64,000 nt of DNA, taken from Macrostomum lignano (lineage: Eukaryota). The stretch lies in assembly GCA_002269645.1 (NCBI GenBank), contig NIVC01001001.1, positions 321,934-385,933 on the forward strand. Direction: 5' to 3'. The notes beneath the pieces are model-generated. The model ran no database searches and was not told the origin of the DNA. It saw only the letters and a program-made list of their open reading frames with translations. Shown here in pieces: positions 7,213 through 55,395 of the stretch (its first letter is position 1; the number at the start of each line of letters is the position of its first letter). Both the position numbers and the translations under genes were made by a program.

Positions 7213-7848
7213 TGACATATTCGTTATATTAGTTTTGGCCTCAAACTGACAAAAAGTGCATCCAAAAAAGAAAGTGCCAACGTACACAGAGTCTATACAG
7301 AAGATGAAGGAATATTCAAGTTCAGAGCTAATGGTATCTTTGAGAAAAATATTTTACAGACAGGAATAAACTAATTACACAAGTTGGCTTGATTGCACTG
7401 CGACTAATTAACAAATTTAAAAAAGCAATCGGCAAAACTGACCATTTTTTCAATTGAAGGATTTACTGTTATTGCAAGGTGCACTTAGCATTGAAGAAAA
7501 AGATATTGACAAGCTAGCAAAGCAAAGCAAAACAGGCAACGATTTTAAGAAGAATTTCTAATAAAAATCCGCTATAAATTTTATTGAATAATAAAAAAAC
7601 TGATTCAGAACAATAATTTACATAGCATATACACGCACTATACATAGTGGGGGTTATGATTACGTAAATATAACTTTTTTTATTAAATATTATAAATATG
7701 ATTTGTTGCTAAAAAGAGGCAGCGAGTGAGAGACAGGCAGACAGAAGAAGAATTAAAAACATCTAAAACTCTTTTCTTAAACAGGTTTCTCAAGTCTGTT
7801 TAACATTAGCATTATAATATTAATATTAAATTGTTAATTAGTGAATCA

Positions 7849-10800
7849 TCAGAGCGTAGTGTACGTGAGTTCCTGACGGTCCAGTCCAGATGCAGCGCCG
7901 CTAGCAGAGGAGGCTGAGACAGCGCCGCCAGCGGAGGAGACGGCCACGGTGAGGGCGGGAAGGCCGGAGACGGCCTGAATGGCGCCGCCGGGTCCACCGG
8001 AGATGGCGGCAGCGGCGGCAACGGAGCTGGCCAGCTGGCTGGGGTCGGACACCAGCAGCAGGTTGGTGAAGTTCGGGAAGCCCAGCTGCTGACCGCTGAT
8101 CAACTGGAAGGAGGGAGCCACGGCCGCTGCGGTGCCCCAGGGATCCGTTGGCGCACTCGGCGCCCCGCTGGCGCCGCCTCCGGCTGTCGCGGCGGCTGCG
8201 GCTGCGGCGGCCGGCTGATAATAGAGAGGCTGACACAGCTGCCACTCGCCTTGCTGGTTCATCACAGCGTATTGGGGAGTTCCGGCGAATGACGTGATGT
8301 TGGGGAGGCTGGCAATGACCGCCTGCTGCTGCTGTTGCTGCTGCTGCTGCTGTTGGTGATGCAGCATCTGCTGCTGCTGCTGCTGATGCACAAGCTGCTG
8401 CTGTTGAAATACCTGCTGGAAATAGAGAACATATTGTTCTACATCGGTATAATAACAATTGACAAAAACCTCCCAAGTCACAGAGAGTGTAAATGCCTGA
8501 CAATGAGAAAATCAGAGCCCCTGTACACCCTGTATGAGCGTGCACTTGTTTGCCATATCCATTAGACATACCTGTTGCTGCTGTTGCTGCTGCTGTTCTT
8601 GCTGCTTCATTGTGGCAACTTGTAGAAGCGCAGGCTGCTGCTGCTGCTGCTGTTGCTGGGCGGACTTGGCACCTCGACCTGATTTACTACGCTTTCCACT
8701 ATTCGAAGACGCCGGCCCACTTTGGCCAGATAAAGCAGCTTTGCTTTTGCCTTTGCCCTTGCCTTTGCCGCCGCCGCTGCTGCTGCCGGCGACGCCAATT
8801 TCGTCGGCAGCGACTTCGCCAACTGTAACGGCGCCTGTAGTAGCGTCGGTGCCGTTGGCGCCTGCGCCTGCGGCGGCTGCTGCCGCGGCTTCTGCTTTCC
8901 GTTTGCGTCGACGCTCGGCTTTGAGCACAGATTTGGGATCGGGCTGGCTCACCCGCATCTCAGTGTAGTCTGTGAATACCTGGCCAAGCGATGAGGATTG
9001 GCATTGATGAGATTGAGGATGTCACTGCTGCAGGTCTGTTACCTAGCCAGTACTATTCGTGAACGATGAGTAGATGCTAACAGGTAAATGAGCAGAGGAT
9101 GAGCAGACTCAATGAGCAGAGAAAGAGCAGAATCAATGAGCAGAAAATGAGCATACTCAATGAGCAGATTCAATGAGCAGAATCAATGAGCAGAACATGA
9201 GCATACTCAATGAGCAGACTCTACTCAATGAGCAGAATCAATGAGCAGAATCAATGTGCAGAGCATGAGCAGACTCAATGAGCAGACATGAGCAGATTCA
9301 ATGAGCAGAGCATGAGCACTCAATGAGCACAGAATTAAAAAGACGAGATGACATTAACACAGACAAGAGGTTTAATCGACTAATTTATCAGCTCACCAGC
9401 TCAGCGTCGGGCACAGGGCCTGTCCTGCCCAAGATTTGGTCTCGCATTTTGCGCAGAGCAATGTAGAACGGCAGTTTATCTGCAGCTCTGGGCAGCTGGG
9501 CGCACCTGGCACTGGAGGAGGGCATCACGAATACCGCGATGTCGTCTGTGCCAGACAGAGGGCCCGGCTGCTTGCCCATGTAGAAATTCTTGTTGCCAAC
9601 AAATGCCTCGTAGATGCCTGCGGGAGGGAGACGGCAGCTTCTCTGCAGTAGATTGAGAACCTCACCCTCACATCGTAGAGAGTCTCAGATAGAATAGAGA
9701 AAAATCTTAACCCCATGATTCTATAGGGGAGAATCTCACTCTTAAAATTTCGTAGAGAGGGTATCTCACCCTAAGATTGCATAGAATAGTCTCAGTCTCA
9801 CCCCTAAGACTGCATAGAGCAGAATCTCACCCATAAGACTGCATAGAGGAGAATCTCCCCCATAAGATTGCATAGAGTCTCACCCTTAAGATTGCATAGA
9901 GGAAAATCTCACCCCTAAGATTGCATAAAGGAGAATCCCACTCTTAAGGTTTGATAGAGACAGTATCTCACCCTGAGATTTTTAGATATAGACATTTAGA
10001 CTCTTAGAGGTTAAAAATCTTACCCATAGACTTAGTGTTAAGAATATCACCCATAGACTTTAAGGCTAGCAACCTGACCAGTATATGTACACCCGAAGAG
10101 CAAAGTAGTGCTAGCTTACCTTTGCCATTGAAGACAGCAATTTTCGGTTTGTGCCGTGTCAGCTTTGTTAACAGTATCTCAGCTGCTTCTTTCATCTCTT
10201 TCCTGCATTAAATATGATATAACAAAAACTGCTGTATAATGATTTTTTCGATACATATCGGCTAAAAATTAAACAAGCAGTTGTACAGGCTTCTTACCTG
10301 GTCAAATCGGCGGCCCCTTTGATCGGGCGGGTGACGACGTTGGTAAAACCGATGCCGAACTGACAGATCCGATAGTCGTCATGGCAACTAAGCTGGTCGC
10401 TGATAAGCCCGCTCTCGGTAAGACAGGACCAGAAGTGGTTGCCAGGGCCCGCATAGTGATGCCCGGAGTACACGGCAGATAACATGGGGTTGAGGCCGAT
10501 CTGGGAGGTCAGAGAGCTGCTTACCGTGAGACTGTGAGACGGCGACTCAAAGCACACAGGTACTCACCACTACAATGTCCAGGCCGTCAGCGAGGTAGTC
10601 TGGTAGGGCGGTGATGGTGCTGGGCAACGGCTGGTTTTGCTCGTCCACCAGCAGCTGGCTGCGGAACTTCTCGCAGTGGGGACAGGCGCCGATAGCGTTC
10701 AGCTCCAGGCGCTGGCGCTTCGTCAGCAGGCTGCAATTGGAGGGCTGGCTGTGTCAGCTGGGTCAGTGGCTGTGTCAGCTTGGTGTGTGGCTGTGTCAGC

Positions 10801-11923
10801 TGGGTGTGTGGCTGTGTCAGCTGGGTATGTGGTTGTGTCAGCTAGGTGAGTGGCTGTGTCATGCAGCTGGGTATGTGGCTGTGTCAGCTGGGTGTGTGGC
10901 TGTGTCAGCTGGGTGTGTGGCTGTGTCAGCTGGGTATGTGGTTGTGTCAGCTGGGTGAGTGGCTGTGTCATGCAGCTGGGTATGTGGCTGTGTCAGCTGG
11001 GTGTGTTGCTGTGTCAGCTGGGTATGTGGTTGTGTCAGCTGGGTGAGTGGCTGTGTCGGCTGGGTGAGTGGCTGTGTCAGCTGGGTGAGTGGCTGTGTCA
11101 GCTGGGTGAGTGGCTGTGTCAGCTGGGTGAGTGGCTGTGTCAGCTGGGTGAGTGGCTGTGTCATGCAGCTGGGTATGTGGCTGTGTCAGCTGGGTGTGTG
11201 GCTGTGTCAGCTGGGTGTGTGGCTGTCAGCTGGGTATGTGGTTGTGTCAGCTGGGCGGGTGGCTGTGTCAGCTGGGTGTGTGGCTGTGTCAGTTGGGTGG
11301 GTGGCTGTGTCAGTTAAGTAGGTGGCTGTGTCAGCTGGTTGGCTGTGTCAGCTGGGTGGCTGTGTCAGCTGGGTGGCTGTGTCAGCTGGGTGGCTGTCAG
11401 TTGGGTGGGTGGCTGTGTCAGCTGTGTGTGGCTGTGTCATTTGGGTGGGTGGCTGTGTCAGCTGGGTGGGTGGCTGTGTCAGCTTGGTGAGTGGCTGTGT
11501 CAGCTAGTTGGCTGTGTCAGCAGACAGCAAATGGGTAGCACCTGACCTTTCCACATTTTTGGCTCCAGATGGTATCACAATAGGTTTGTTCATAAGCTGC
11601 TGCTGCTGTTGCTGCTGCTGATGCTGCTGCAAAAGCATCAGGTGCTGCTGCTGCTGTTGCTGCGGAGTGGCCGGAGGGGTCGGCAGGTGCACAGAGGTCA
11701 CAGATGAGCTGGGCTGAGACACGGGACTCATGAGATGATTGACTTGATGTTGCTGCTGCTGTGGCTGCTGAATGATCACGCCAGACTGCTGTTCTCCGTT
11801 AACCATGCCGTTACCAGGGACATTTTGAACAATCACTGGTTGCTGCTGCTGCTGCTGGGCATAGGAGACCGCTGAGCCGGTGTGGTGATAAGCAGGTGTG
11901 AAAGTCTGTCCAGCTGCACTCAT
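7849..11923 (-). CDS. TDG: Thymine-DNA glycosylase (family-2 UDG) paralog A, ~673 aa; exons 11923-11547, 10730-10568, 10500-10298, 10202-10120, 9617-9397, 8979-8572, 8415-7849
   Basis: The spliced core [40 protein letters not shown]...GIGFTNVV...KIAVFNGKGIYEAF...VMPSSSARCAQLPRAADKLPFYIALRKMRDQI matches TDG motifs (GxNP, GHHY, GIGFTN, AVFNGK, MPSSSAR). All introns are GT-AG, phases are consistent, and total CDS length 2022 nt is divisible by 3. Confidence 0.93.
9085..9330. repeat. ~13-bp minisatellite (tcaatgagcagaa) in TDG-A intron 5
   Basis: Direct reading. Confidence 0.9.
9660..9980. repeat. ~29-bp minisatellite (tctcacccctaagattgcatagaggagaa) in TDG-A intron 4
   Basis: Direct reading. 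Confidence 0.85.
10740..11520. repeat. 16-21-bp minisatellite (ggctgtgtcagctgggtgagt) filling TDG-A intron 1
   Basis: Direct reading; source of the many WLCQLG/TQLTQP ORFs. Confidence 0.95.
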
Positions 11924-12990: not shown

Positions 12991-14619
12991 AAGCAGAAAG
13001 CTCTGTGGGAGTGATACTAATGAATAGCTAGCAAATAGCACGCCGCCAAAGAAGCAAAAATGCAACACACAGTCGAGTCAGAAGACAGACAGCAAGCGCA
13101 TAGAACAGTAGAGACATGTGTATTTGAAAATTTCTCTGCAATACATAAACATTTCCGATTCATTTACTGAACTATATATAGAGGCCAGAGAATAATGAGA
13201 CACATATGAGTTAACATGATCATATTAATAAAGGATCCAAAATTACATAATTTCCTCAGTGCCTGTGCTAATCAAGCAGTTTACTTAATACTACACAGCA
13301 TTTCAATCGGTAAGCTGATTTATTATTTAGAACCAACAGTAGTACACAAGAATGATCCTATATAATGATATGAATTAAACTTCTCTCAAAACTGTAATAA
13401 CAATATGTATATAAGACAGCTAAGCATTAAAAAATGCCGCCAACAAAAATTATTAAAAAAGAAAAAAACACTTGATGTAGACGGAACCATAAAACGAATT
13501 ATAACAAATACTTCAGTAGTAATAAGCAGTACTAAAAATGAGTTAAATATATATGCCACAATAACACCGTTGCCATTAGTCAGCTTTCATGTAAATATAT
13601 AATTTAATGTACATATATAGCAAGCAGTGGATCTGTACAGAAGATGGAATGCATGCTTAGAGACAATAGAGCTGTGGACCAACATGTATACAGTTTATAT
13701 ATAATCATTTAAATGGGATTTAACTGGGTCGGGGCCTGCTGCGGTCGCCTTACTTAAAACCATTTTTTATACATTTCAGTATGTATTACTAATAACAGTA
13801 GAAAACTGAGAGACATAAAAACAAACAAGCAAAATTAAACAATGAAGCGGAGAAGCGAGTTCATAGCTACTATTAGTAACAAGTAGTGCATGAGAAAAAA
13901 ATGGGGAAATATAATTGTAGCACACAACAATTTTCAAGTTTGTTAATCAAAAAAAGCAGAAATGAAATTAACTCAACCAGCTCAAGTGCATACTGATTAT
14001 CTGTACAGAAAAATCAATTTTAATGTGAGTAAAACTTTCACAGCACAGCAGACAATCACTTGAAGCAGCATTAACCAGATTAAAGCATCAGTTGAATTTC
14101 CTTAAAAAAATTGGTTTCATTATTCAGTTAGCTGCAGAAGTCAGAATATAATATTAAACACTCAACAAATATTACAGAGGATTCTGTTGTATTAATGTTT
14201 AAGAAGTGCAATAAAAGTTTTAAAGCAATTCAAATAACACCAAACATGCACAGTTTGTTAATTACTATAGGCGTGATGCATTTAAAAACAAAAAATCAAT
14301 AATATATTTAATTTTATATTTATAGATAAATATATGATCAATGATAAAACAACTTGGCAGCAGAGGCTGGATGCGACAGATAAAATATGGCTAAATTTTA
14401 AAATAAACCCACAAAGGTTTCAAACATCAAAACGCGCAATTTTTGTTAAAACTACTTGTAGTAGTTCCTGGTTAATGCGTTTGACTTTCGCTTTAAAAGC
14501 AGCAGAGCTCCATTCTGTAAAGCTCAGATAGATCAAACCGATCAACTACTCATAGTAGAATGTCCCAATAATTTTTTTATACCGCAACTAAACCCCGCAG
14601 ATGCTACTAAAAATAGATA

Positions 14620-17600
14620 TTAGAGCGTAGTGTACGTGAGTTCCTGACGGTCCAGTCCAGATGCAGCGCCGCTAGCAGACGAAGCTGAGACAGCGCCGCC
14701 AGCGGAGGAGACGGCCACGGTGAGGGCGGGAAGGCCGGAGACGGCCTGAATGGCGCCGCCGGGTCCACCGGAGATGGCGGCAGCGGCGGCAACGGAGCTG
14801 GCCAGCTGGCTGGGGTCGGACACCAGCAGCAGGTTGGTGAAGTTCGGGAAGCCCAGCTGCTGACCGCTGATCAACTGGAAGGAGGGAGTCACGGCCGCTG
14901 CGGTGCCCCAGGGATCCGTTGGCGCACTCGGCGCCCCGCTGGCGCCGCCTCCGGCTGTCGCGGCGGCTGCGGCTGCGGCGGCCGGCTGATAATAGAGAGG
15001 CTGACACAGCTGCCACTCGCCTTGCTGGTTCATCACAGCGTATTGGGGAGTTCCGGCGAATGACGTGATGTTGGGGAGGCTGGCAATGACCGCCTGCTGC
15101 TGCTGTTGCTGCTGCTGCTGCTGTTGGTGATGCAGCATCTGCTGCTGCTGCTGCTGATGCACAAGCTGCTGCTGTTGAAATACCTGCTGGAAATAGAGAA
15201 CATATTGTTCTACATCGGTATAATAACAATTGACAAAAACCTCCCAAGTCACAGAGAGTGAAAATAGCCTGACAATGAGAAAATCAGAGCCCCTGTACAC
15301 CCTGTGTGAGCGTGCACGACTTGTTTGCCATATCCATTAGACATACCTGTTGCTGTTGTTGCTGCTGCTGGTGTTGCATTTCTTGTTTCATCCCTGCCAC
15401 TTGAAACAGAACAGTTTGTTGCTGTTGCGGCTGCTGCTGCTGTTGCTGCTGTTGAGCAGTTTGTTGAGCCACAGCTTTAGATTTTGTGCCTTTGCTTCGC
15501 TTTTTCTTCGGCTCGGCTGCTGACGTGGCGGCATTAGCGTTAGCGCCGCTTTGAACTGCGCAGCCAGCGGCGCCACCGGCTGCCGCTTCAGCGCCAGCAA
15601 CTGCGCCACCAGCTGCTGCGGCCGCCGCCTCCGCTTCGGCGGCTTTTCGTTGACGACGACGCTCGGCTTTGAGCACAGATTTGGGATCGGGCTGGCTCAC
15701 CCGCATCTCAGTGTAGTCTGTGAATACCTGGCCAAGCGATGAGGATTGGCATTGATGAGATTGAGGATGTCACTGCTGCAGGTCTGTTACCTAGCCAGTA
15801 CTATTCGTGAACGATGAGTAGATGCTAACAGGTAAATGAGCAGAGCATGAGCAGAGGATGAGCAGACTCAATAAGCAGACTCAATGAGCAGAATCAATGA
15901 GCAGAATCAATGAGTAGAATCAATGAGCAGAATCAATGAGCAGACTCAATGAGCAGAGGATGAACAGAATAAATAAGCAGAACATGAGCAGACTCAGGGA
16001 GCAGAACATGAGCAGACTCAATGAGCAGACTCAATGAGCAGAATCAATGAGCAGAATCAATGAGCAGAACATGAGCATACTCAATGAGCAGAATCAATGT
16101 GCAGAGCATGAGCAGACTCAATGAGCAGAGCATGAGCAGAATCAATCAGCAGAGCATGAGCAGAATTAATGAGCAGAATCAATGAGCAGAGCATGAGCAG
16201 ACTCAATGAGCAGACTCAATGAGCAGAATCAATGTGCAGAGCATGAGCAGACTCAATGAGCAGACATGAGCAGATTCAAAGAGCAGAACATGAGCACACT
16301 CAATGAGCAGACTCTACTCAATGAGCAGACTCTACTCAATGAGCAGAATCAATGTGCAGAGCATGAGCAGACTCAATGAGCAGACTCAATGAGCAGAATC
16401 AATGAGCAGAGCATGAGCAGACTCAATGAGCAGACTCAATGAGCAGAATCAATGAGCAGAATCAATGTGCAGAGCATGAGCAGACTCAATGAGCAGACAT
16501 GAGCAGATTCAAAGAGCAGAACATGAGCACACTCAATGAGCAGACTCTACTCAATGAGCAGAATCAATGTGCAGAGCATGAGCAGACTCAATGAGCAGAG
16601 CATGAGCAGAATCAATGAGCAGAGCATGAGCAGAATCAATGAGCACTCAATGAGCACAGAATTAAAAAGACGAGATGACATTAACACAGACAAGAGGTTT
16701 AATCGACTAATTTATCAGCTCACCAGCTCAGCGTCGGGCACAGGGCCTGTCCTGCCCAAGATTTGGTCTCGCATTTTGCGCAGAGCAATGTAGAACGGCA
16801 GTTTATCTGCAGCTCTGGGCAGCTGGGCGCACCTGGCACTGGAGGAGGGCATCACGAATACCGCGATGTCGTCTGTGCCAGGCAGAGGGCCCGGCTGCTT
16901 GCCCATGTAGAAATTCTTGTTGCCAACAAATGCCTCGTAGATGCCTGCGGGAGGGAGACGGCAGCTTCTCTGCAGTAGATTGAGAACCTCACCCTCACAT
17001 CGTAGAGAGTCTCAGATAGAATAGAGAAAAATCTTAACCCCATGATTCTATAGGGGAGAATCTCACTCTTAAAATTTCGTAGAGAGGGTATCTCACCCTA
17101 AGATTGCATAGAATAGTCTCAGTCTCACCCCTAAGACTGCATAGAGCAGAATCTCACCCATAAGACTGCATACAGGAGAATCTCCCCCATAAGATTGCAT
17201 AGAGTCTCACTCTTAAGATTGCATAGAGGAGAAACTCACCCCTAAGATTGCATAGTGGACAATCTCACCCCTAAGATTGCATAAAGGAGAATCCCAAGAT
17301 TTCATAGAGACAGTATCTCTCCCTAAGATTGCATAGAAAAGTCTCACCCGCTGCATAGAGGAGAATCTCACCCTTAAGATTGCATAGAGGAGAATCTCAC
17401 CTTAAAGATTGCATAGAAGAGAATCTTACCCCAAAGATTGCATAGAGAAGAATCTCACCCCTAAGATTGCATAGAGGAGAATCTCACCCTTAAGGTTGCA
17501 TAGAAGTCTCACCCCTAAGATTGCATAGAAGAGTCTCACCCGCTGCATAGAGGAGAATCTCACCCAAAGATTGCATAGAGGAGAATCTCACCCCTAAGAT

Positions 17601-19075
17601 TGCATAGAGGAGACTCGCACCCTAAGATTGCATAGATGAGAATCCCACCCTTAAGATTGCATAGGCAAGGCTCTATCCTGCAAAATAAATCAATATCTAC
17701 AAGCAATAAATCACTGCAGACTCTAATTACTCACCTTTGCCATTGAAGACTGCAATCTTCGGCTTGTGCCTGGTCAATTTTTCCAATAAAATTTCGGCAC
17801 CCTGTTTCATTTCTTTCCTGTAAACAATATTCAATATGGGGTAGAATTAAAACAAAGATAATTTCGATACATATCGGTAGTTGGAACGCTTAACTAAACC
17901 AGAGGAGACAGTAAACCATACCTGGTCAGCTCGGCGGCCCCTTTGATCGGGCGGGTGACGACGTTGGTAAAACCGATGCCGAACTGACAGATCCGATAGT
18001 CGTCATGGCAACTAAGCTGGTCGCTGATAAGCCCGCTATCGGTCAGGCAGGACCAGAAGTGGTTGCCAGGGCCCGCATAGTGATGCCCGGAGTACACGGC
18101 GGATAACATGGGGTTGAGGCCGATCTGGGAGGTCAGAGAGCTGCTTACCGTGAGACTGTGAGACGGCGACTCAAAGCACACAGGTACTCACCACTACAAT
18201 GTCCAGGCCGTCAGCGAGGTAGTCTGGTAGGGCGGTAATGGTGCTGGGCAGCGGCTGGTTTTGCTCGTCCACCAGCAGCTGGCTGCGGAACTTCTCGCAG
18301 CGGGGACAGGCGCCGATAGCGTTCAGCTCCAGGCGCTGGCGCTTCGTCAGCAGGCTGCAATTGGAGGGCTGGCTGTGTCAGCTTGGTGAGTGGCTGTGTC
18401 AGCTGGGTGAGTGGCTGTCAGCTTGGTGAGTGGCTGTGTCAGCTGGGTATGTGGTTGTGTCAGCTGGGTATGTGGCTGTGTCAGCTTGGTGAGTGGCTGT
18501 GTCAGCTGGGTGTGTGGCTGTGTCAGCTGGGTGTGGCTGTGTCATTTGGGAGGGTGGCTCTGTCAGCTGGGTGGCTGTGTCAGCTGGGTGAGTGGCTGTG
18601 TCAGCTGGGTGAGTGGCTGTGTCAGCTGGGTGGCTGTGTCAGCAGACAGCAAATGGGTAGCACCTGACCTTTCCACATTTTTGGCTCCAGATGGTATCAC
18701 AATAGGTTTGTTCATAAGCTGCTGCTGCTGTTGCTGCTGCTGATGCTGCTGCAAAAGCATCAGGTGCTGCTGCTGCTGTTGCTGCGGAGTGGCCGGAGGG
18801 GTCGGCAGGTGCACAGAGGTCACAGATGAGCTGGGCTGAGACACGGGACTCATGAGATGATTGACTTGATGTTGCTGCTGCTGTGGCTGCTGAATGATCA
18901 CGCCAGACTGCTGTTCTCCGTTAACCATGCCGTTACCAGGGACATTTTGAACGATCACTGGCTGCTGGGCATAGGAGACCGCTGAGCCGGTGTGGTGATA
19001 AGCAGGTGCGAAAGCCTGAGGCTGATGTGCAGATGCTGATGTAGACAAAGTCAGCGCCTGGCCAGCTGCACTCAT
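14620..19075 (-). CDS. TDG: Thymine-DNA glycosylase paralog B, ~674 aa; exons 19075-18669, 18354-18192, 18124-17922, 17817-17735, 16944-16724, 15727-15347, 15186-14620
   Basis: Same exon structure and core motifs as paralog A; GT-AG junctions; total CDS 2025 nt, open throughout. Confidence 0.93.
15835..16660. repeat. ~13-bp minisatellite in TDG-B intron 5 (about 3x longer than in copy A)
   Basis: Same tcaatgagcaga unit as 9085-9330. Confidence 0.9.
16985..17665. repeat. ~29-bp minisatellite in TDG-B intron 4
   Basis: Same unit as 9660-9980, longer array. Confidence 0.9.
18365..18645. repeat. 16-21-bp minisatellite in TDG-B intron 1 (shorter than in copy A)
   Basis: Same unit as 10740-11520. 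Confidence 0.9.
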
Positions 19076-27460: not shown

Positions 27461-30400
27461 ATGTCCCAACACAGGCTGCTGTTGTTGCTGACTGCCGCTC
27501 TGATTGCAGCCGCGTCAGCTGCTCCGTGCTTCATCTACCGAGGCTGGAAGAATCCGTGCCACGAAGTCACCTGCCCGGACAATGCCCAGTGTGTGCCGGC
27601 ATTGAACATGCACAAGTACAAGTGCACCTGCCCCACGGACTGCTGGGACATCGGTGACAGCGATGATAGCGGACAGGTGACGGGGGCAGACAGTGAGAGG
27701 GAAAGCAATGTGAGATGAGACGGAGGGCAGAGTGTGAGATGAGAAGAGAGACTATGAGATGAGACAGATGGCAGAGTGTGAGATGAGAAGAGAGACTATG
27801 AGATGAGATGGAGGGCAGAGTGTTAGATGAGAAGAGAGACTATGAGATGAGACGGAGGGCAGAGTGTGAGATGAGACGGAGGGCAGAGTGTGAGATGAGA
27901 CGGAGGGCAGAGTGTGAGATGAGACGGAGGGCAGAGTGTGAGATGAGACGGAGGGCAGAGTGTGAGATGAGACGGAGGGCAGAGTGTGAGATGAGACGGA
28001 GGGCAGAGTGTGAGATGAGACGGAGGGCAGAGTGTGAGATGAGAAGAGAGAGTAGAGAAAAGTTTACACTGACAGTTTAGCTCAATGGACATAATGAAAC
28101 TGCATGGATGCAGTATAGGTATCTAGAGTTGAGATTCTAGAATATTATTTAAGCAACCCACGAGCCCGATGCCAAAGCGATACATGTACATTGTTCGAAT
28201 GCAGGTGTGCGGCAGCGATGGCATCACCTACGAAAGTCTGTGCCACCTTCAGCGCGCCTCCTGCCACGCCGCTGTCATGGTGACGCCTGTGTACCGCGGC
28301 GTCTGCGACCCCTGCGTCCTGGAAAGCAACGGGAGGCGGCGCTCCGTGTGCCCGCAGAATCAGCGCTGCGTTTTAGATGCTCTGAGGCGGCCCCGATGCG
28401 AGTGCAATTATTCGTGTAGGCGGCTAGATATACTACTACTGACTGATCAAGTAGAAAGTGTTGGGCATTTTGTGACTTTTTTGTAACCGCTGAGAAGTGT
28501 TTGATGTCCAGTTCCTAGTGGAATCTAGAGGCATGCAATTCCTCAGATCTAGAGGCATCCAATTCCTCAGATCTAGAGCTAGGCATCCAATTCCTCAGAT
28601 CTAGAGGTATGCAATTCCTCAGATCTAGAGGCGTCTTAATTCCTCAAATCTAGAAGCATGCAATTCCTCAGATCTAGAGGCATGCAATTCCTCAGATCTA
28701 GAGGCGTCTAAATTCCTCAAATCTAGAAGCATGCAATTCCTCAGATCTAGAGGCATCCAATTCCTCAGATCTAGAGGCATCCAATTCCTTCAGATCTAGA
28801 GGCATCCAATTCCTCAGATCTAGAGGCATCCAATTCCTCAGATCTAGAGCTAGGCATCCAATTCCTCAGATTTGGAGGCATCCAATTCCTCAAATCTAGA
28901 AGCATGCAATTCCTCAGATCTAGAGGCATCCAATTCCTCAGATCTAGAGGCATCTAATTCCTCAGATCTAGAGGCATCCAATTCCTCAGATCTAGATGCA
29001 TCCAATTCCTCAGATCTAGAGGCATCCAATTCCTCAGATCTAGAGGCATCCAATTCCTCAGATCTAGAGGCATCCAATTCCTCAGATCTAGAGGCATCCA
29101 ATTCCTCAGATCTAGAGCTAGGCATCCAATTCCTCAGATCTAGAGGCATCCAATTCCTCAAATCTAGAAGCATGCAATTCCTCAGATCTAGAGGCATCCA
29201 ATTCCTCAGATCTAGAGGCATCCAATTCCTCAGATCTAGAGGCATCCAATTCCTTCAGATCTAGAGGCATCCAATTCCTCAGATCTAGAGGCATCCAATT
29301 CCTCAGATCTAGAGCTAGGCATCCAATTCCTCAGATCTAGAGGCATCCAATTCCTCAAATCTAGAAGCATGCAATTCCTCAGATCTAGAGGCATCCAATT
29401 CCTCAGATCTAGAGGCATCCAATTCCTCAGATCTAGAGGCATCCAATTCCTCAGATCTAGATGCATCCAATTCCTCAGATCTAGAGGCATCCAATTCCTC
29501 AGATCTAGAGGCATCCAATTCCTTCAGATCTAGAGGCATCCAATTCCTCAGATCTAGAGTCATCCAATTCCTCAGATCTAGAGCTAGGCATCCAATTCCT
29601 CAGATCTAGAGGCATCCAATTCCTCAAATCTAGAAGCATGCAATTCCTCAGATCTAGAGGCATCCAATTCCTCAGATCTAGAGGCATCCAATTCCTCAGA
29701 TCTAGAGGCATCCAATTCCTTCAGATCTAGAGGCATCCAATTCCTCAGATCTAGAGGCATCCAATTCCTCAGATCTAGAGCTAGGCATCCAATTCCTCAG
29801 ATCTAGATGCATCCAATTCCTCAGATCTAGATGCATCCAATTCCTCAGATCTAGAGGCATCCAATTCCTCAGATCTTGAGGCATCCAATTCCTCAGATCT
29901 AGAGGCATCCAATTCCTCAGATCTAGAAGCATCCAATTCCTCAGATCTAGAGCTAGGCATCCAATTCCTCAGATCTAGAGGCATCCAATTCCTCAGATCT
30001 AGAGGCATCCAATTCCTCAGATCTTGAGGCATCCAATTCCTCAGATCTAGAGGCATCCAATTCCTCAGATCTAGATGCATCCAATTCCTCAGATCTAGAT
30101 GCATTCAGTTTCCCAAATCTAGAGGTTCTAGTTCCTCAGATCAATAGATTTCAGTTCCTCAGTCCTAGAGGCCTCCTTAAACTTACTTCAACAGCTCAAA
30201 CTCGCTTTCGCAGGCGACCGCATCGGCCCGGACGCTGGCGATCTGGTGTGCGCATCCAACGGCGTAACCTACTCAGACCAGTGCCGGATGAACCACGACG
30301 CCTGCCTTCGCGGCGTCAACACCACGAAGCTGTCCACCGGCGAGTGTCCAACCGGCAAATACTGCACCGAGTGCCGGCATCCTTACCAGCGCTGCCGAGT

Positions 30401-31262
30401 TGAGAATGAGCTGACAGGCGTGTCCACCTGTCACTGTCCGGAGTCCTGTCCGCCAGTGCTCAGTCCGGTTTGCGGCTCCGACAATAACACCTACGAGTCG
30501 CTGTGCCACCTGTACAGGCACGCCTGTCTGAACAATCTGCCACCGAAACAGCTGCTGCCAGTCCATCGCGGCAGCTGCAGCCGGGAGGGCCTGTGCGGCC
30601 GTGGCCGCAGCCAGCCCTGCCTGTTTGGCGGCGTCTGTCGGGTGCGCATCGAGGAGAAGTTGATGTCGCATCACCAGATTAGCTACAGCGGCAAGTTCGC
30701 CTGCGACCCGCCCGAATGCCTCTGGTCGGAGACGCCAGACGATGCTGAGCCGGCCGGAGACCGCTGGCTGCTGGCCGTGATTCTGTCCGCCGCAGGCGGA
30801 GAGTTCAGCGCCCAGGTGTGCGGTACGGACGGCGTCACGTACAAATCTGAGTGCCACCTGCGCCGGAGGGCGTTCGAATTGCGGCGCGACATTCGAGTCA
30901 GCGAGAGAAGCAGCTGCAATCCGTGCAGGAAGGTCACCTGTCCGCACTTCGGTCTGTGCCGCGTCAACTCGCGCGGCCAGCCGCAATGCCACTGTCCGAC
31001 TAACTGTCTGTACAGCCCTGGCGAGACCAGCGTCTGCGGCAGCGACGGTCGAATCCACGACTCCGGCTGCGAGCTGAGGCGAACCTCCTGTCGGACTAAG
31101 CAAGACATTCAGATTTTGCCGATCGAGATGTGTGGCCAGGGAGCTGCTGGCAGAAGGAGGCGTGGGAATAAAGAAAAGCGCAGCGTCGACCGAGGACGCC
31201 AACAGCATCAGCATCGGCTGCGGCATTATCGAAAGCGCAGTTTCCTTGTTGCTCAGCAGTGA
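27461..31262 (+). CDS. Secreted follistatin/Kazal-repeat protein (agrin N-terminus-like), 491 aa; exons 27461-27676, 28205-28415, 30214-31262
   Basis: Hydrophobic signal peptide MSQHRLLLLLTAALIAAASA. Five FS modules with Kazal cores VCGSDGITYESLCHL, VCASNGVTYSDQC, VCGSDNNTYESLCHL, VCGTDGVTYKSEC, VCGSDGRIHDSGC. Junctions cag|gtgacg, t|gtaggc...cag|gc restore a Cys codon; total 1476 nt. Confidence 0.85.
27712..28050. repeat. 24-bp minisatellite (gtgtgagatgagacggagggcaga) in Kazal-gene intron 1
   Basis: Direct reading. Confidence 0.9.
28520..30170. repeat. 24-bp minisatellite (gaggcatccaattcctcagatcta), ~65 units with higher-order variants, in Kazal-gene intron 2
   Basis: Direct reading; recurring 28-bp (gagctaggc) and 25-bp (tccttcag) variant units. 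Confidence 0.95.
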
Positions 31263-35389: not shown

Positions 35390-38300
35390 TCAGCACTGGG
35401 AAGAGCCGACATCATCGTACCAGGCCGAAGCTGCACCAGCTGCTGGGTGTCTTGCTGGCTCCCTGCCTGCAGCTGTCGCTGTGGTTGTCGGCTCAACGCT
35501 AATCCGAGTCAACCGTTCGAGATCTCGCTCGGTCAGGTGCAGCTGCTGGGGCGGCCGGCCGTCTCTGGTGCTGCTGTAGCCGCTGCTGCTGCTGACTGTG
35601 GACTCGGCGCCTGCAGCTACCGTGGACAGCCTGGTTGGCGTCTGCTGCTGACGAGAGGAAGGACCGGCGGCAGAGTTCGCGGTAGCCAACGCCTCGGCAG
35701 CAGTTCGCTCTTCTAAAACGCTCAAACGCTTCGAAATAAAAGCGGCAGATGAAGAAGTGGGAGGCTGAAGCGGCGGCAGCGACATGGCGGATGACAACTC
35801 GCTGTCCGACACTTCGGTGATTGTGGACAAATTCGGCTCGTAGACGGAGTCCTCGGCACCGGCCAGCAGCTGGAGCTGCTCATCACCGCTGCCGTATATC
35901 AGCTGATTCAGTGTCTGGCCTTCGTTCGGCTGCCAGGGCGCCTTGCTGGGAGGCGGCTGCGGCTGCTGTTTGGCCGAAGGAGCCTCCGGCAGGTCCGATT
36001 CGCTCTCTTGCGACGGGCGTCGAAAGCCGGGAGGCGGCGGCGGGGGCGGCGGTGGCTGAGGCTGAGACGGAGGTGGCGTGGCCGGTACAGCCGGGTCATT
36101 GTCGTCTATCTCGGCTAGAAGCTCAGTGTCCGCCGCAGTGACCGGCAGGAACTGGCCAGAGTGCACGCTGAGCAGCGACTCCTGCGAAGAGGAGGACACG
36201 GACTCGATCAGCTGCTGCTGTACAGGCGTGTTGGCCACGTCTTGAAGGCCTAGCAGAGCAGTGGCAGCCAGCTGCAGCAGTCGGCCAGCCTGCCTGCCTC
36301 CGCCGCCTCCGCTAAGCTGCAGTAGCACGAACTCCTGCCCAACTTCCAGCAGATCAAAGCCAAGCGACGACAACAACTCGTGACAACCGTCGGAGCCGCG
36401 CCATAGTTGCACAGGGACTCGCAGCTCCGCTGTGCCTGTCCGCGGCATTGTGCTGGACACTGTTGGCCGGCCTGAAGTCCGGCTGGACGTTGAAGTTGAA
36501 GCCAGCAGCAGGTCGACCAGCTGCCGCAGCTGCTGGCCAGACGAGGCTGCCAGCAGGCCGGACAGAGCGCCCAGCGACCTGTCTGGGAGGCCCAGCAGCG
36601 CCATCAGACACGCCGACGTCTGCGCCAGGCGTTCGGCCGGGTCCAAAGTCGGGAAGAACAGCACAGCGGCAGTCGACTCGTCGCTAGGCACGGCGTTGAG
36701 GTCGTCGGTCGTCTTGCCGACGCCGCTCGTCAGCCGGAATCCCAGCGCCGCCAGAAGGTTGCGCCAGTGTCGGCTGGAGGCCACCTGGCGACCGACTTTC
36801 TTTTCGACGCTTAACTGGCTGGTGTACATCGGCGTGCGACAGCCCTGCGGGGAGCGACAAAATATTTTGAGTTTCTCTTGTCAAAATTATCTAGCTTCAT
36901 CAGTCACTATGATTACTTCGCTTCTGCGTCAGTATCACCCCATCTCAATCTCACCCCATCAAAATCTCACCCCATCTCAATCTCATCCCATCTCAGTCTA
37001 ATCTAGTCTCGGTCTCACCCCAGCTCAATCTCACCACATCAGTCTCACCCCAGCTCAACCTACCCCATCTCAATCTCATCCTATCTCAGTCTCACCTAAT
37101 CTCATTCCATCTCAATCCCGCCCCAACTCAATCTCACTCAATCTCAGTCTCATCCCACCTTAGTCTCATCCCATCTCAATCTCACCTGGACAATCCGCTG
37201 CAGTGATTTCTCAATAAGATGTAGCAGAATTCGCAGCGCCTCTTTGCGCATCTGATCGGCGCCACCGCTGGTCCCGGCGCCAATTCCGGCGCCAATCAGA
37301 GCGGACAGCGAGCGCGCAATTGTTAAACTGCGCTTCCTCAGCCGAGCGGACGCGTCGCCAATCAGCGCCCAACCGGCCCAGCACTGGGGCGCCGCGCTAA
37401 TCTCGGCGCGCACCAGAGCTTGAGCCGCGCGTAGCGCCACCCCAGCCGGTTGATACTGCAACAGGCCGGTGTAGAAGGACTTCAACAGAGCGCGCGTAGC
37501 TTTGTCCGGCGCCGGCCAGAGGCACACGAGGCAGCAGCGAGCTCCGGCAGCAAGGAACGAACGGCACAGAGTCTGCAGACCGTCTGAGGTGGCCTGGCAA
37601 GCGGGGCTGACGTGGCCGCAGCTGAGCACTACAAGCCGGCAGGCGGGCAGCCGGGCCTGAGTCAGGTCATGCGGGGTGAGCAGTAGGTCGGATAGAGACG
37701 ACGACTGCAGGTTGGCGTCCTCTGCTGAAGATGCTTCGGCGAATTGCTGCTGCTGCTGCTGCTGTTGTTGGTCCTGTACAGGCGGCGCCAGAACAATGGC
37801 CGATTGCGACCAGCTGATATTGGCGGCAAAGTGTAGCAGTTCAATTGGTTGGCTGTCTTCTTTTTGGTCAGTCTGCTGCTGCTGCATCAGCTGCTGTAGC
37901 ACAGCTCGGCGAGTTGCTTGACGACCGAGCAGCGGCTGGGGAGCCGCGGCCAGCAGGTCGGCAAGGCTGCGGCACTCGTGCTCCGCCGGCGGTGCTGACT
38001 GGCACCAGAGATGTCGGTCGGCAACGCCGCGGGGCAGCCAGGGGTTGCCGACGATCAGCTGACGGTGCGGCTGTAGCGACTCCGCGGCCGCGGCGGCTGA
38101 GGCGTCGGCACCGTCCGGTGCGGAGGCGGCCTCGGCAACTGTTGCTGGGGAGTCTTTTGGCCTGGATTTGGAAGATTGGAATTCGATTGGACAGACGAGC
38201 TTGCAGGTCCTCAGTTGCTGGGCCAGCCTCCCAGATCCTCATCAGTTGCTGGTCCACCAGCCTCCCAGATCCTCATCAGTTGCTGGTCCACCAGCCTCCC

Positions 38301-42122: not shown

Positions 42123-45100
42123 TTCTGTCTGTCTGTCTGTCTGTCTGCCTGTCTGTCTGCCTTAGTGTCCCTCCAAGTCTCTCCAATATCACCTCAGTAA
42201 CTGTCCCAGAATCCCATCGCCATCATCGCGCACCTGTTTAGCCACCCTCAGCTGGTGGGTCAGGCAGCCAATCGCCTGCTCAAAGTTGCCGCTAGCAGCG
42301 TGCAGGCCGCCCATCTCGCCGTAGGCCGAGGCCATCCAGTCCAACCGCTGGGCCTCGTGAGCCACAACCAGCCGCTTCTCCTGGCAGACCAGCGCCTGCT
42401 GCAGGCTGCCGCTGTGCCGATGACAGGCGGCCAAGCCAGCCAGGGCCCGCTGCTGCCCAGTTAGATTAGCAATCCGCTGGCACAGAGCCAAATAGCGTTC
42501 GTAGCAACCAACGGCGCCTTCCCAGTCGCCAAGCGATTCGTAGCACATGCCTAATCGGCACAGAGCTTCGCCGCGTTCGCCGTCGACAGCCCGACGACTT
42601 GGCGGCAGACGGTCGAGCTGGGACAGCTGCTGCTCCAGGTAGCCAATGGCCTGTTCGAACTCACTGCTTGACACCTTGGCAGCGGCTAGTTGACCGCAAG
42701 CTCTGGCCTCCAGGGCTGGCTGGCCGGACTCCTGGGCCAGGCGGAGGGCTTCCTCGAAGCACCGAACTGCGGAACCGACATTGCTCAGCGCCAGGTTGGT
42801 GCCGCCCAGGTGGCACAGCGCCTGCGGCGGTTGGGGATGTGATAATTAATAATTAGTAACTCCAATTATAATTGTAACTGCTGGGCAATACGCATCTTCT
42901 AAATAATTAGGAAGCTTATATTGACCCATTAGGTAGCTTATATCGATCCATTAGGTAGCTTATATTGATCCATTAGGTATCTTATATTGACCCATTAGGA
43001 AGCTTATATTGACCCATTAGGTAGCTTATATTGACCCATTAGGTAGCTTATATTGATCCATTAGGTAGCTTATATTGACCCATTAGGAAGCTTATATTGA
43101 CCCATTAGGTAGCTTATATTGACCCATTAGGTAGCTTATATTGACCCATTAGGTAGCTTATATTGACCCATTAGGTAGCTTATATTGACCCATTAGGTGG
43201 CTTATATTGACCCATTAGGTGGCTTATATTGACCCATTAGGTGGCTTATACTGACTCATTAGGTGGCTTATATTGACCCATTAGGTGGCTTATATTGACC
43301 CATTAGGTAGCTTATTTTGATCAATTAGGTAGCATATATTGACCCATTAGGTAGCTTATTTTGATCTATTAGGTAGCTTATTTTGACCGGTAAGTAGCTT
43401 ACCTGACACACGGGTGCCTGGTCGAGCGGCGATTGGCTAAGCGTCAATTTAGAATCGCCCAGGTGAGACTGCCTCTCCAGACTGTACGTGGCACTACTGT
43501 GCCTGCCAGCCTCATCAACCACCTGCCTAGCCAATTCCAATTCTAATTGATGATGCCGTAGAGCGGCTAATTGGTTGCCAAGGCGACTGTGCGCTTCGCC
43601 TAGGCCGGCGTGAGCGGCCACTAATAGCCGAGGCCGATTGCCGGCAAGCTGAAGCTGCTCAGCCCGAAGCTCCATCGCTTGGGCGGTGTCACCCAGAGAC
43701 ATGCTGGCGTCGGCCAGATGACCGAGTGAGCGAAACTCCAGATCTGGCTGCTGCTGCTGCTGCAAGGAAAAGAGACAAAATTATATATTAAATTAGTATT
43801 ACGATAATAGCAATTGATTACACCTGCCCTAATGGGCTATTGCGCGGCGCATCTGAAGACTGCGTACGGCTGTTCAGTCCAAGGACTGGGGGGTCGCCAC
43901 ACGCACCCTCAATTACCCCAGCTAATGCTGGTACCCATTTTACAGCTGGGTGAACTGAAGAAACTGAAGTGTTAAGTGTTTCGCTCAAGGACACAAATTG
44001 TTCCGAGTGGGACATGGGTCGAACCCCCAAACTACCAATCGTGAGTATGACGCTCTAACCACTAGGCATACAGAACATTACATAGCTCATTAGACAGCAT
44101 TTATGATCAGTTGCTAGGCAGCCAATCAGAGCTGGATGGAAGTCTGCAAGGTCTGTTAGGTAGTTCCAGAAACACGAGGCAGTCTAATAATTCAATAATC
44201 AGTAATTTATTACTCAATGTTCATTGTTTTTGCAAAAACAAAAATAATGCAAAAAAGAGACAGACTGATGGCATCTTGCGAACTAAAATTCCAGCAGAAA
44301 CTGTTTTCTTAACGAAGGTTCACAACTGCCTACGACTGTCTGTCAGTCAAAAGCGTCGAGAGCACGAGATGCCTCAATGTGTCAAAAGGTGAACTCCATA
44401 GCATTGACGCCACAGCGTCAATTTCAACTTGAATGATTGGCGACCTAAAACTGCCAATGATTCAAACACGCCTGCCAACTTTGCTTCACTGCTAAGTGTA
44501 GGTCTCCAAATTTTAGAATGCAAGCGGCCCATTGCTAGCGATGCAATCATTAAACAATGACGCGTGTCCTTCGTATACTTCTGAACTTGTCCGGGAGACA
44601 GAAAGACAACGAACAGCAAAGACAATGAGACAAAAGACCGTGTTTGCTTAAGGCAATAGGATGACGGATAGTTTAAGAAATAAAATCTCTGGTATCGCAG
44701 TTCGGAATTTTTTGCACTGGCAAAAAAATGAATTTCGCCCATTTTGATGAAATTCGAAATCAGTTTCTGGTGGGTGCTGGGCAGCCAGCTGCTGACAGTG
44801 CTGGCTCAGTGCCCCGCTCCCTTCTACCTTGAGGCCGGCAGGTGCATATTCGTGAGCACAACTCAGGGCTTCACCTGGTGCGAGGCCAATCGGCAGTGCT
44901 CATCGATCGGAGGCGAGCTCATCAACTCGTACAGCTTGCTGAAGCTGCTGCCCAGCATGCCGAGTTTTCAAAACGGCAAGAAATACTGGCTCGGAGTGAC
45001 CGACTTGGCAGATGAGAGACACGCCAGCAAGGAGGGCTGGCAGACGGTGTTCGGCAGAGGCCAGCTGCCTCTCGAGGACTCTCTGTGGATCAACGGTGAC

Positions 45101-55375: not shown

Positions 55376-55395
55376 GACGGACGGACAGAGAGACG

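What the first reader, a model, noticed from the sequence alone, without database searches (positions are those of the whole stretch)
10298..10500. Both TDG paralogs have a rewired active site: GLNPM instead of G(I/L)NPG, and Ile at the human Thr197 position
Seen in sequence: exon 3 reads atc ggc ctc aac ccc atg (I-G-L-N-P-M) and ...aac gtc gtc acc cgc ccg atc aaa ggg (N-V-V-T-R-P-I-K-G) in both copies (copy B: 18124-17922). Established: family-2 UDGs (TDG/MUG) have GINPG. The equivalent position in family-1 UNG is the Tyr of GQDPY, which sterically excludes thymine's 5-methyl. Human TDG Thr197 helps Asn140 position the nucleophilic water. The catalytic Asn, GHHY, Asn191 and the Arg275 wedge (MPSSSAR) are retained. 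Inference: a bulky Met in the C5 pocket plus loss of the Thr could convert this TDG into a uracil-restricted enzyme that cannot excise T/5fC/5caC, or into a slow or binding-only reader. That would be an undescribed functional variant in an animal lineage.
Basis: partly seen in the sequence, partly recalled or inferred. Interest (0 to 1): 0.72.

Follow-up and report, generated by a model that had tools for sequence, protein, structure and literature searches.

The report
Flatworm TDG paralogs with altered active site
Two neighbouring, intact copies of a thymine-DNA-glycosylase repair gene in the flatworm Macrostomum lignano carry active-site residues seen in almost no other member of the family, which suggests a changed enzyme, but nobody has tested what it does.

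Summary
Exon 3 of two tandem genes on the minus strand (10500-10298 and 18124-17922) encodes IGLNPM and FTNVVTRPIKG. These residues align to human TDG as I139L, G142M and T197I.

Both genes have intact 7-exon GT-AG models (673 and 674 aa). They are under purifying selection (core dN/dS about 0.10) and fold as TDG (TM 0.84-0.90). A public M. lignano protein fragment is an exact substring of copy B.

Met at position 142 appears in none of about 430 family-2 sequences sampled. Ile at 197 appears in only one unnamed metagenomic eukaryotic clade. All other catalytic and base-contacting residues are kept.

The flatworm baseline is GINPS, not GINPG. M. lignano also has canonical TDG paralogs (GINPS, Thr197) elsewhere, so this is an extra, diverged gene pair and not the animal's only TDG.

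Published work places Gly142 at the C5 substituent, the abasic sugar and the base-exit channel. T197A costs about 32-fold in G·T activity.

The most likely reading is a slower glycosylase with a narrower substrate range. A binding-only reader, or a neutral coupled substitution, is not excluded. No function has been tested. Interest is modest.

The parts
7849..11923 (-). TDG paralog copy A, 673 aa. Seven exons: 11923-11547, 10730-10568, 10500-10298, 10202-10120, 9617-9397, 8979-8572, 8415-7849 (stop TGA).
   Evidence: The gene model was built from frame continuity. All introns are GT-AG and there is no internal stop. The core matches human TDG at E = 8e-54 and Pfam UDG PF03167. The exon 1/2 junction gives ...NVESLLTKRQR, which matches ...LESSLTKRQR of the M. 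lignano canonical TDG. The C-terminus ...ELTYTTL resembles ...KLVYTAL of other flatworm TDGs.
14620..19075 (-). TDG paralog copy B, 674 aa. Seven exons: 19075-18669, 18354-18192, 18124-17922, 17817-17735, 16944-16724, 15727-15347, 15186-14620 (stop TAA).
   Evidence: The public M. lignano fragment P0244 (UniRef100_A0A1I8JE10) is an exact substring of this protein.
10298..10500 (-). Exon 3 of copy A. It encodes motif A (GLNPM), GHHY, Asn157, FTN (Asn191) and TRPIKG.
17922..18124 (-). Exon 3 of copy B, with the same motifs.
10483..10494 (-). Copy A codons CTC AAC CCC ATG, encoding Leu(139) Asn(140) Pro Met(142) in human numbering. Met is residue 186 of the protein.
   Evidence: alignment.
10321..10323 (-). 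Copy A codon ATC, encoding Ile at the human Thr197 position (residue 240).
18107..18118 (-). Copy B codons for Leu-Asn-Pro-Met of motif A.
17945..17947 (-). Copy B codon ATC, encoding Ile at the Thr197 position.
9397..9617 (-). Exon 5 of copy A. It encodes motif B, VMPSSSARCAQLPRA, with the Arg275-equivalent wedge retained.
10746..11505 (.). A 21-bp minisatellite (about 37 copies) that fills intron 1 of copy A. The counterpart in copy B is 18370-18632 (about 13 copies). It is open in all frames but is not coding.
   Evidence: An in-frame stop follows exon 1, and the exon 1/2 junction is conserved.

Best explanation
The window is Macrostomum lignano genome. It carries a tandem pair of intact, selectively maintained copies of a lineage-specific TDG (family-2 uracil-DNA-glycosylase) paralog.

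Shown: the protein keeps the TDG fold. It also keeps every residue that in human TDG contacts the flipped base, wedges the DNA or carries out catalysis (Asn140, Ala145, His150/151, Tyr152, Asn157, Asn191, Gly199, Asn230, Met269-Arg275). Three positions that ring the flipped nucleotide have residues that are absent or nearly absent elsewhere in the family: Ile139->Leu, Gly/Ser142->Met and Thr197->Ile.

Inferred mechanism: it is still a DNA glycosylase, but a slower one with a narrower substrate range.
- Loss of the Thr197 hydroxyl removes one ligand of the nucleophilic water and the hydrogen bond that orients Asn140. The backbone carbonyl contact remains. By analogy with human T197A, the chemical step should fall by roughly one to two orders of magnitude but not be abolished.
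- Met142 puts a long hydrophobic side chain where the Gly142 backbone touches the C5 substituent and the abasic sugar, and where the excised base leaves. This should disfavour 5-substituted pyrimidines (T, hmU, fC, caC) relative to uracil, and/or slow the release of the base.

The canonical paralogs elsewhere in the genome (GINPS, Thr197) would keep the standard G·T repair. M. lignano is reported to retain DNMT1 and DNMT3, so it would need that repair.
For: Identity and fold:
- Human TDG chains at E = 8e-54 and Pfam UDG.
- AlphaFold2 model with pLDDT 92.4, matching human TDG structures at TM 0.82-0.91 and rmsd 1.4-2.1 A.

Organism: P0244 from M. lignano is an exact substring of copy B.

Intact genes: two 7-exon GT-AG models without stops, conserved to the flatworm-type C-terminus.

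Constraint:
- Copies A and B show dN/dS = 0.10 over 223 core codons (22 synonymous and 8 non-synonymous differences, dS 0.15).
- All listed catalytic residues are retained although the core has diverged 24% from the canonical paralog.

Rarity: there is no Met142 in 319 + 115 sequences. Ile197 is found only in one unnamed clade. Leu139 occurs in under 1%. Three of the only six residues of the core with family frequency of 2% or less lie in the active site.

Mechanistic premises from papers:
- Thr197 and the nucleophilic water; T197A is 32-fold down (PMC5137436).
- The Gly142 backbone NH contacts the 5hmU hydroxyl, and Gly142 is one of four residues around the abasic sugar (PMC3488261).
- Gly142 lines the base-exit channel, and simulation predicts that G142Y slows thymine release about 1000-fold without affecting flipping (PMC5778594).
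- A bulky residue at this motif-A position narrows specificity in other UDG families. The Tyr of GQDPY does so, and BdiUng A59Y loses hmU and xanthine activity (PMC5449639).

Context: canonical paralogs are present, and M. lignano retains DNMT1/3 (PMC9246332).
Against: - There are no biochemical data, and I had no expression data for these genes.
- I could not inspect side-chain geometry, because the tools do not expose model coordinates. Whether Met142 points into the pocket, into the exit channel or against Ile197 is unknown.
- Ser at 142 is common in invertebrates, and Ile/Val at 197 occurs in another conserved clade. Each position tolerates change, and the effect may be small.
- Met is flexible and could swing away, as was argued for A145S (PMC3488261).
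- The G142Y effect is a simulation, not a measurement.
- The relative-rate test does not show a consistent acceleration of this paralog. It gives 22 vs 10 against flatworm outgroups, 17 vs 14 and 13 vs 14 against annelid and chelicerate, and 7 vs 16 against human.
Confidence: 0.5

Rival explanations
1. Neutral or compensated pair. The polar pair Ser142/Thr197 of flatworm TDGs was replaced by a hydrophobic pair Met142/Ile197 that pack together. Activity and specificity are essentially unchanged, and the paralog differs from the canonical one only in regulation or in its long Q-rich tails.
For: - There is strong purifying selection, and every other catalytic residue is kept.
- Position 142 tolerates Ser or Thr in many lineages.
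- Position 197 is Ile, Val or Asn in another clade that keeps N140, HHY, N191 and MPSSSAR.
- Ile is beta-branched like Thr and keeps the backbone carbonyl contact to the water (PMC5137436; PMC3488261).
- There is no consistent rate acceleration.
Against: - Human T197A loses 32-fold in G·T activity.
- The hydroxyl at 197 is otherwise kept in about 98% of eukaryotic and 100% of the sampled bacterial sequences.
- The Ile197 clade has Gly142, so Ile does not require Met.
- Three rare changes clustered around the flipped nucleotide look directed rather than random.
Confidence: 0.25
2. Binding-only or very slow 'reader'. The protein still flips and holds G·U, G·T or oxidised-5mC sites but hardly cleaves or releases them. 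It would act as a lesion or mark sensor, or as a transcriptional scaffold, through its Q-rich N- and C-terminal regions.
For: - One water ligand is lost.
- A bulky residue sits in the exit channel, and for Tyr this is predicted to trap the base.
- The DNA-binding and wedge residues are kept.
- Canonical paralogs could carry out the repair.
- The disordered Q-rich extensions are long.
Against: - The catalytic Asn140 and the full base-contact set are conserved after 24% divergence from the canonical paralog. A pure reader would not need Asn140.
- In human TDG, T197A is reduced but not dead.
- Other flatworm TDGs with canonical sites have similar Q-rich tails, so the tails are not special to this paralog.
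Confidence: 0.15
3. A redundant copy drifting towards loss. The substitutions are mildly deleterious changes that are tolerated because M. lignano has several TDG genes after genome and tandem duplication.
For: - At least four TDG-family genes exist in M. lignano (two here, plus P0001 and P0169).
- Public gene models miss the catalytic exons of these two copies (P0006, P0244).
- I found no transcript-derived protein in the database search.
Against: - Both copies have complete ORFs and canonical splice sites.
- dN/dS is about 0.10 in the core, with 22 synonymous differences.
- The rare residues are shared by both copies, so they predate the duplication and have been kept since.
Confidence: 0.07

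Closest known systems
Human thymine DNA glycosylase (TDG; PDB 5HF7, 3UFJ, 2RBA, 4FNC and others)
   Same: - About 51-56% identical in the catalytic domain (E = 8e-54).
- The predicted fold superposes at rmsd 1.4-2.1 A.
- It has the same Asn140, Ala145, His150/151, Tyr152, Asn157, Asn191, Gly199 and Asn230, and the MPSSSAR motif with the Arg wedge.
   Different: - Leu for Ile139, Met for Gly142 and Ile for Thr197.
- Also Ser for Met144, Val for Ala146 and Ala for Pro153; the last is common in invertebrates.
- The flanking regions are long and Q-rich and unrelated to the human N- and C-terminal regions.
Canonical Macrostomum lignano TDG (P0001, UniRef 'G/T mismatch-specific thymine DNA glycosylase', and P0169) and other flatworm TDGs (Clonorchis, Schistosoma, Dibothriocephalus)
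   Same: - 76% (P0001) and 65-68% identity in the core.
- The Cys-containing N-terminal segment (CPxCEKF) is shared with the M. lignano canonical paralogs; the VFTDYTEMRVSQPDPKS...KAERRRKRKAEAAAA segment and, where the sequence is full length, the ...VYTAL-type C-terminus are shared with flatworm TDGs generally.
   Different: Where the exon is present in the model, these all have GINPS and TRPTKG (Ser142, Thr197). The window genes have GLNPM and TRPIKG.
E. coli MUG and bacterial mismatch-specific glycosylases (PDB 1MUG, 1MTL; D. radiodurans 2C2P)
   Same: Same family-2 fold (TM 0.74-0.92), motif A with catalytic Asn.
   Different: - Bacterial members keep Gly142 (113/115) and a hydroxyl residue at 197 (Ser 93, Thr 22 of 115).
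- Only 24-28% identical.
Family-1 uracil-DNA glycosylase (UNG), motif GQDPY
   Same: It has a large side chain at the fifth position of motif A, the structural counterpart of TDG Gly142. There it contacts C5 of uracil and excludes thymine (PMC5449639; PMC5778594).
   Different: - The window protein has Asn, not the catalytic Asp.
- It has MPSSSAR, not the HPSPLS motif with the catalytic His.
- It is a TDG by sequence and fold.
- Met is flexible and aliphatic, not a rigid aromatic wall.
Unnamed eukaryotic TDG clade from metagenomes and Logan assemblies (P0178, P0183, P0253, P0276 and others; VNINPGLYSV ... GLMNMxxKPIKSCQ)
   Same: It has Ile (also Val, Asn or Thr) at the Thr197 position, with Asn140, HHY, Asn157, Asn191, Asn230 and MPSSSAR all kept.
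   Different: - It keeps Gly142 and has Asn for Gly138 and Met/Val for Thr190.
- It is only about 41-49% identical.
- Its source organism is unknown.
Designed human TDG G142Y (molecular-dynamics study, PMC5778594)
   Same: A bulky side chain is introduced at exactly this position. The study predicts that it sits in the solvent-filled base-release channel and raises the barrier for thymine exit without disturbing flipping.
   Different: It is a computational mutant with Tyr, not a natural Met, and no activity was measured.

Membership tests
Family-2 UDG (TDG/MUG) | UDG-superfamily alpha/beta fold, with closest similarity to TDG/MUG | tested here: met
   - Pfam PF03167 at E = 9e-17.
- Human TDG chains at E = 8e-54 and E. 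coli MUG at 1e-16.
- AF2 model pLDDT 92.4; Foldseek top 21 hits are all human TDG (TM 0.78-0.91), followed by MUG.
Family-2 UDG (TDG/MUG) | Catalytic Asn in motif A (G-I-N-P-G, Asn140) | tested here: met
   AAC codon at 10491-10489 (A) and 18115-18113 (B). Aligned to Asn140.
Family-2 UDG (TDG/MUG) | Small residue (Gly; Ser in some invertebrates) at the fifth position of motif A (Gly142) | tested here: not met
   Met in both copies. Met occurs in 0 of 319 eukaryote-biased and 0 of 115 bacterial homologs.
Family-2 UDG (TDG/MUG) | Hydroxyl residue (Thr/Ser197) that coordinates the nucleophilic water and positions Asn140 | tested here: not met
   Ile in both copies. Thr or Ser in 245/249 sequences of the unbiased sample and 115/115 bacterial ones. 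The role of the residue is from PMC5137436.
Family-2 UDG (TDG/MUG) | Motif B, MPSSSAR, with the intercalating Arg275 | tested here: met
   VMPSSSARCAQ is present in exon 5 of both copies.
Family-2 UDG (TDG/MUG) | Base-contact residues Ala145, His151, Tyr152, Asn157 and Asn191 | tested here: met
   All are identical to human TDG.
Family-2 UDG (TDG/MUG) | Excision of U (and T) opposite G in double-stranded DNA | not testable with these tools
   This needs recombinant protein and glycosylase assays.
Metazoan TDG subfamily | [quoted passage not shown] | tested here: met
   FNGKG is retained; Asn occurs in 352 of about 358 homologs.
Family-1 UDG (UNG) | GQDPY with catalytic Asp, and an HPSPLS motif with catalytic His | tested here: not met
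   Motif A has Asn and motif B is MPSSSAR. UNG structures are not among the top fold matches. Only the bulky fifth residue of motif A is analogous.

The most novel reading that the evidence does not exclude
A glycosylase-derived reader. In Macrostomum, a duplicated TDG has been turned by Met142 (which blocks the base pocket and exit) and Ile197 (which removes the water-positioning hydroxyl) into a protein that flips and holds G·U/G·T lesions or oxidised 5-methylcytosines without efficient excision. It would act as a natural 'trap' variant used for signalling or chromatin regulation, in an animal that retains DNMT1/3.
Probability: 0.12. Interest if true: 0.7.

Novelty: new variant of a known kind. 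Interest (0 to 1): 0.36.

Why it matters
TDG is the enzyme that repairs G·T mismatches left by 5-methylcytosine deamination. In vertebrates it also completes active DNA demethylation.

The roles of Gly142 and Thr197 are known only from human mutants, crystal structures and simulation. A naturally selected G/S142M + T197I enzyme sits in the same genome as a canonical paralog. That gives a ready-made comparison for asking how the C5 pocket, the exit channel and the water-coordinating hydroxyl set specificity and turnover.

M. lignano is a genetically tractable regeneration model reported to retain DNMT1 and DNMT3. The biological role of a specialised TDG could therefore be tested there.

If the variant behaves like the canonical enzyme, the result is still useful. 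It would show that two residues called 'strictly conserved' are replaceable.

Tried and rejected
1. Orthologs with GLNPM/TRPIKG in other species. None appeared among 155 hits of the word-indexed search or the best 150 of 3403 hits in the exhaustive representative search. I therefore could not date the substitutions or run branch-site tests.
2. Source organism of the Ile197 clade. The cluster look-up gave no names. The one long contig (L001, 108 kb, JGI 3300071516) has uninformative neighbours. I gave this up.
3. Relative-rate test of the variant against the canonical paralog. It depends on the outgroup and is inconclusive.
4. Side-chain geometry of Met142 and Ile197. The structure tool returns only confidence and secondary structure, so I could measure no contacts or rotamers.
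5. Literature on Macrostomum TDG, or on experimental G142 mutants. I found only a simulation of G142Y.
6. Artefact or pseudogene explanations. I rejected these because both ORFs are intact, splice sites are canonical, the codons are shared, and dN/dS is about 0.1.
7. A third copy or an alternative exon 3 in the window. tblastn found none.
8. The 21-bp repeat after exon 1 as coding sequence. It is open in all frames. I rejected it because an in-frame stop follows exon 1 in copy A, and the GT...AG junction restores the conserved ...ES(S/L)LTKRQR.
Full report
**The observation.**

On the minus strand, 10500-10298 translates to IGLNPMLSAVYSGHHYAGPGNHFWSCLTESGLISDQLSCHDDYRICQFGIGFTNVVTRPIKGAADLT. 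The stretch 18124-17922 gives the same peptide with two conservative changes. Both copies lie on the minus strand, in a direct tandem duplication of about 4 kb (7848-11908 and 14619-19018, 80-98% nucleotide identity in blocks). tblastn finds no third copy and no alternative exon 3 in the window.

**What the genes are.**

The spliced core (exons 2-5) matches human TDG chains at E = 8e-54, E. coli MUG at 1e-16 and Pfam UDG PF03167. The HMMER alignment puts Met opposite human Gly142 and Ile opposite Thr197.

I built complete models for both copies: seven exons each, all introns GT-AG, no internal stops, 673 and 674 aa. The exon 1/2 junction restores ...NVESLLTKRQR, like ...LESSLTKRQR in the canonical M. 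lignano TDG. The proteins end ...ELTYTTL, like ...KLVYTAL in full-length flatworm TDGs.

An AlphaFold2 model of the catalytic domain has mean pLDDT 92.4. Its 21 best PDB matches are all human TDG (TM 0.78-0.91, rmsd 1.3-2.1 A), followed by MUG.

**Organism.**

The closest database proteins are from Macrostomum lignano. P0244 (UniRef100_A0A1I8JE10, 152 aa) is an exact substring of copy B, including its hypervariable linker. P0006 is a mis-fused model that joins the C-terminal halves of copy B and an A-like copy. The public models lack the catalytic exons, so the GLNPM/TRPIKG protein is effectively absent from protein databases.

**Rarity.**

| Sample | Position 142 | Position 197 |
|---|---|---|
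| Unbiased set: 120 closest homologs plus 132 additional proteins among the 150 listed 50%-identity representatives (130 proteins in all reach E <= 1e-30) | G 174, S 44, T 3 (of 221) | T 215, S 26, I 4, A 2 |
| After adding a search seeded with an Ile197 protein | no Met among 319 sequences | (biased by the seed) |
| 115 bacterial MUG-type proteins | G 113, V 1, R 1 | S 93, T 22 |

Leu at position 139 is also rare (under 1%). Only six residues of the 248-residue core have a family frequency of 2% or less, and three of them are these active-site positions. I treat that clustering as suggestive only, because the grouping was made after the fact.

1. Flatworm TDGs do not have GINPG. Where the region is present in the model, every other flatworm sequence has GINPS (or GLNPS), and so do rotifers and a copepod-like group. 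This includes the canonical M. lignano paralog P0001. A side chain at 142 is therefore tolerated, and the local change was most likely Ser->Met.

2. Ile at 197 has a natural precedent. An unnamed eukaryotic clade from metagenomes and Logan assemblies (VNINPGLYSV ... GLMNMxxKPIKSCQ) has Ile, Val, Asn or Thr there. It keeps Asn140, HHY, Asn157, Asn191, Asn230 and MPSSSAR. Cyclophyllidean cestodes have Ala.

3. The window genes are not the animal's only TDGs. P0001 (GINPS, TRPTKG) and P0169 (TRPTKG; its model lacks exon 3) are canonical M. lignano paralogs, 76-78% identical to the window genes in the core. Among the named species compared, the canonical and variant M. lignano types are each other's closest relatives (pairwise identities, no tree built). 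This points to a duplication within the macrostomorph lineage.

**Selection.**

Between copies A and B, the catalytic core (223 codons) has 22 synonymous and 8 non-synonymous differences. This gives dS 0.154, dN 0.016 and dN/dS 0.10 (0.094 over 247 codons). One synonymous difference lies two codons after the Met.

Divergence is mosaic: dS is 0.014 in exon 7, 0.04 in exon 1 and 0.15 in the core, and the linker in exon 6 is unalignable. That pattern suggests gene conversion at the ends.

All other catalytic and base-contact residues are identical to human TDG. A relative-rate test against P0001 depends on the outgroup. It gives 22 vs 10 unique changes with flatworm outgroups, about equal with Capitella and Tachypleus, and the reverse with human. 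I claim no acceleration.

**What the residues do, from papers.**

- Thr197: its hydroxyl and backbone oxygen contact the putative nucleophilic water, and its hydroxyl positions the Asn140 side chain. T197A lowers G·T activity 32-fold. The authors call the residue strictly conserved in TDG and MUG (PMC5137436).
- Gly142: it is one of four residues around the abasic sugar. Its backbone NH bonds the hydroxyl of excised 5hmU, and the 5-substituent sits between Ala145 and Pro153 (PMC3488261).
- Base exit: Markov-model molecular dynamics places Gly142 and Pro153 as the clamp of the narrow base-release channel. The same study predicts that G142Y slows thymine exit about 1000-fold without affecting flipping, and it notes that the UDG counterpart of Gly142 is Tyr (PMC5778594).
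- Other UDG families: in family 1 that Tyr blocks C5-substituted bases. In BdiUng (GQDPA), the A59Y mutant loses activity on 5hmU and xanthine (PMC5449639).
- Context: M. lignano is reported to retain DNMT1 and DNMT3 (PMC9246332).

**Interpretation.**

Shown: these are two intact, constrained, lineage-specific TDG paralogs whose active site differs at three otherwise near-invariant positions.

Inferred: the protein is still a glycosylase, because Asn140 and the whole contact set are kept under selection. Its chemical step is probably weakened by the loss of the Thr197 hydroxyl. Met142 probably makes its pocket or exit channel less permissive for 5-substituted pyrimidines, or slower to release product. 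I give this reading 0.5.

| Rival | Probability |
|---|---|
| Compensated polar-to-hydrophobic pair with no net functional change | 0.25 |
| Binding-only or very slow reader | 0.15 |
| Redundant copy in early decay | 0.07 |

It is only one of several outcomes compatible with the data.

**Comparison and novelty.**

By sequence, fold and motif B this is a family-2 UDG of the metazoan TDG subfamily. It fails two of the family's usual active-site signatures: a small residue at motif A position 5, and the Thr/Ser197 hydroxyl. It is not a family-1 enzyme, since it has no catalytic Asp or His motif.

I found no paper on Macrostomum TDG and none on a natural Met142 variant. I rate it a new variant of a known kind with modest interest. 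It is a clean natural experiment for TDG enzymologists, in a tractable flatworm. But it is one diverged paralog in a duplicate-rich genome, and the functional consequence is unknown.

Noticed in passing
window 55300-61800: An LTR-retrotransposon-like element on the + strand. ORF 56385-59000 has a zinc knuckle, aspartyl protease, reverse transcriptase and RNase H. ORF 59188-60345 has an integrase core. The element is flanked by 99.6% identical direct repeats (56125-56367 and 60520-60763) and by long minisatellite arrays (55384-56124, 60762-61764). I did not print or assemble its sequence.
   Followed up: partly
window 9087-9335, 9723-9980, 10746-11505; 15835-16656, 17014-17664, 18370-18643: Introns 1, 4 and 5 of each TDG copy hold their own minisatellite (units of 21, 29 and 13/24/37 bp). 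Copy numbers differ strongly between the two gene copies, for example about 37 against about 13 copies of the 21-bp unit. The 21-bp array is open in all three frames and could be mistaken for coding repeats.
   Followed up: partly
window 7849-8415 vs 14620-15186, and 8572-8979 vs 15347-15727: Divergence between the two gene copies is mosaic. Exon 7 is almost identical (dS 0.014) and exon 1 is close (0.04). The core is at 0.15, most of it concentrated in exon 4. The exon 6 linker is hardly alignable. This pattern fits partial gene conversion after an older duplication.
   Followed up: partly
public proteins P0006 and P0244 (M. lignano, UniRef) compared with window copies A and B: The public gene models for this locus are truncated or fused. 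P0244 is only the C-terminal part of copy B. P0006 joins the C-terminal halves of two tandem copies. They carry unrelated automatic names (DUF3591, TAFII55_N). The catalytic exons with GLNPM/TRPIKG are missing from the protein databases searched.
   Followed up: yes
homologs P0001-P0007, P0348, P0366, P0029-P0034 and others: Ser replaces Gly142 (GINPS) in all the flatworm TDGs, in bdelloid rotifers and in a copepod-like group. The textbook GINPG motif therefore does not hold across invertebrates. The cestodes Hymenolepis and Taenia have Ala at the Thr197 position.
   Followed up: partly
proteins P0178, P0183, P0253, P0276, P0279 and others; locus L001 3001-4665: An unnamed eukaryotic TDG clade known only from metagenomes and Logan assemblies. 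It has Asn for Gly138, Met/Val for Thr190 and Ile/Val/Asn at the Thr197 position, with all other catalytic residues kept. I could not identify the source organism.
   Followed up: partly
window 30246-31262 (+), 37150-37902 (-), 37845-38912 (+), 44744-45484 (+), 46162-46812 (-): Other coding fragments in the window by Pfam: four Kazal-type inhibitor domains, a CHAT domain, DUF6858, a C-type lectin domain and TPR repeats. I did not build gene structures for them.
   Followed up: no
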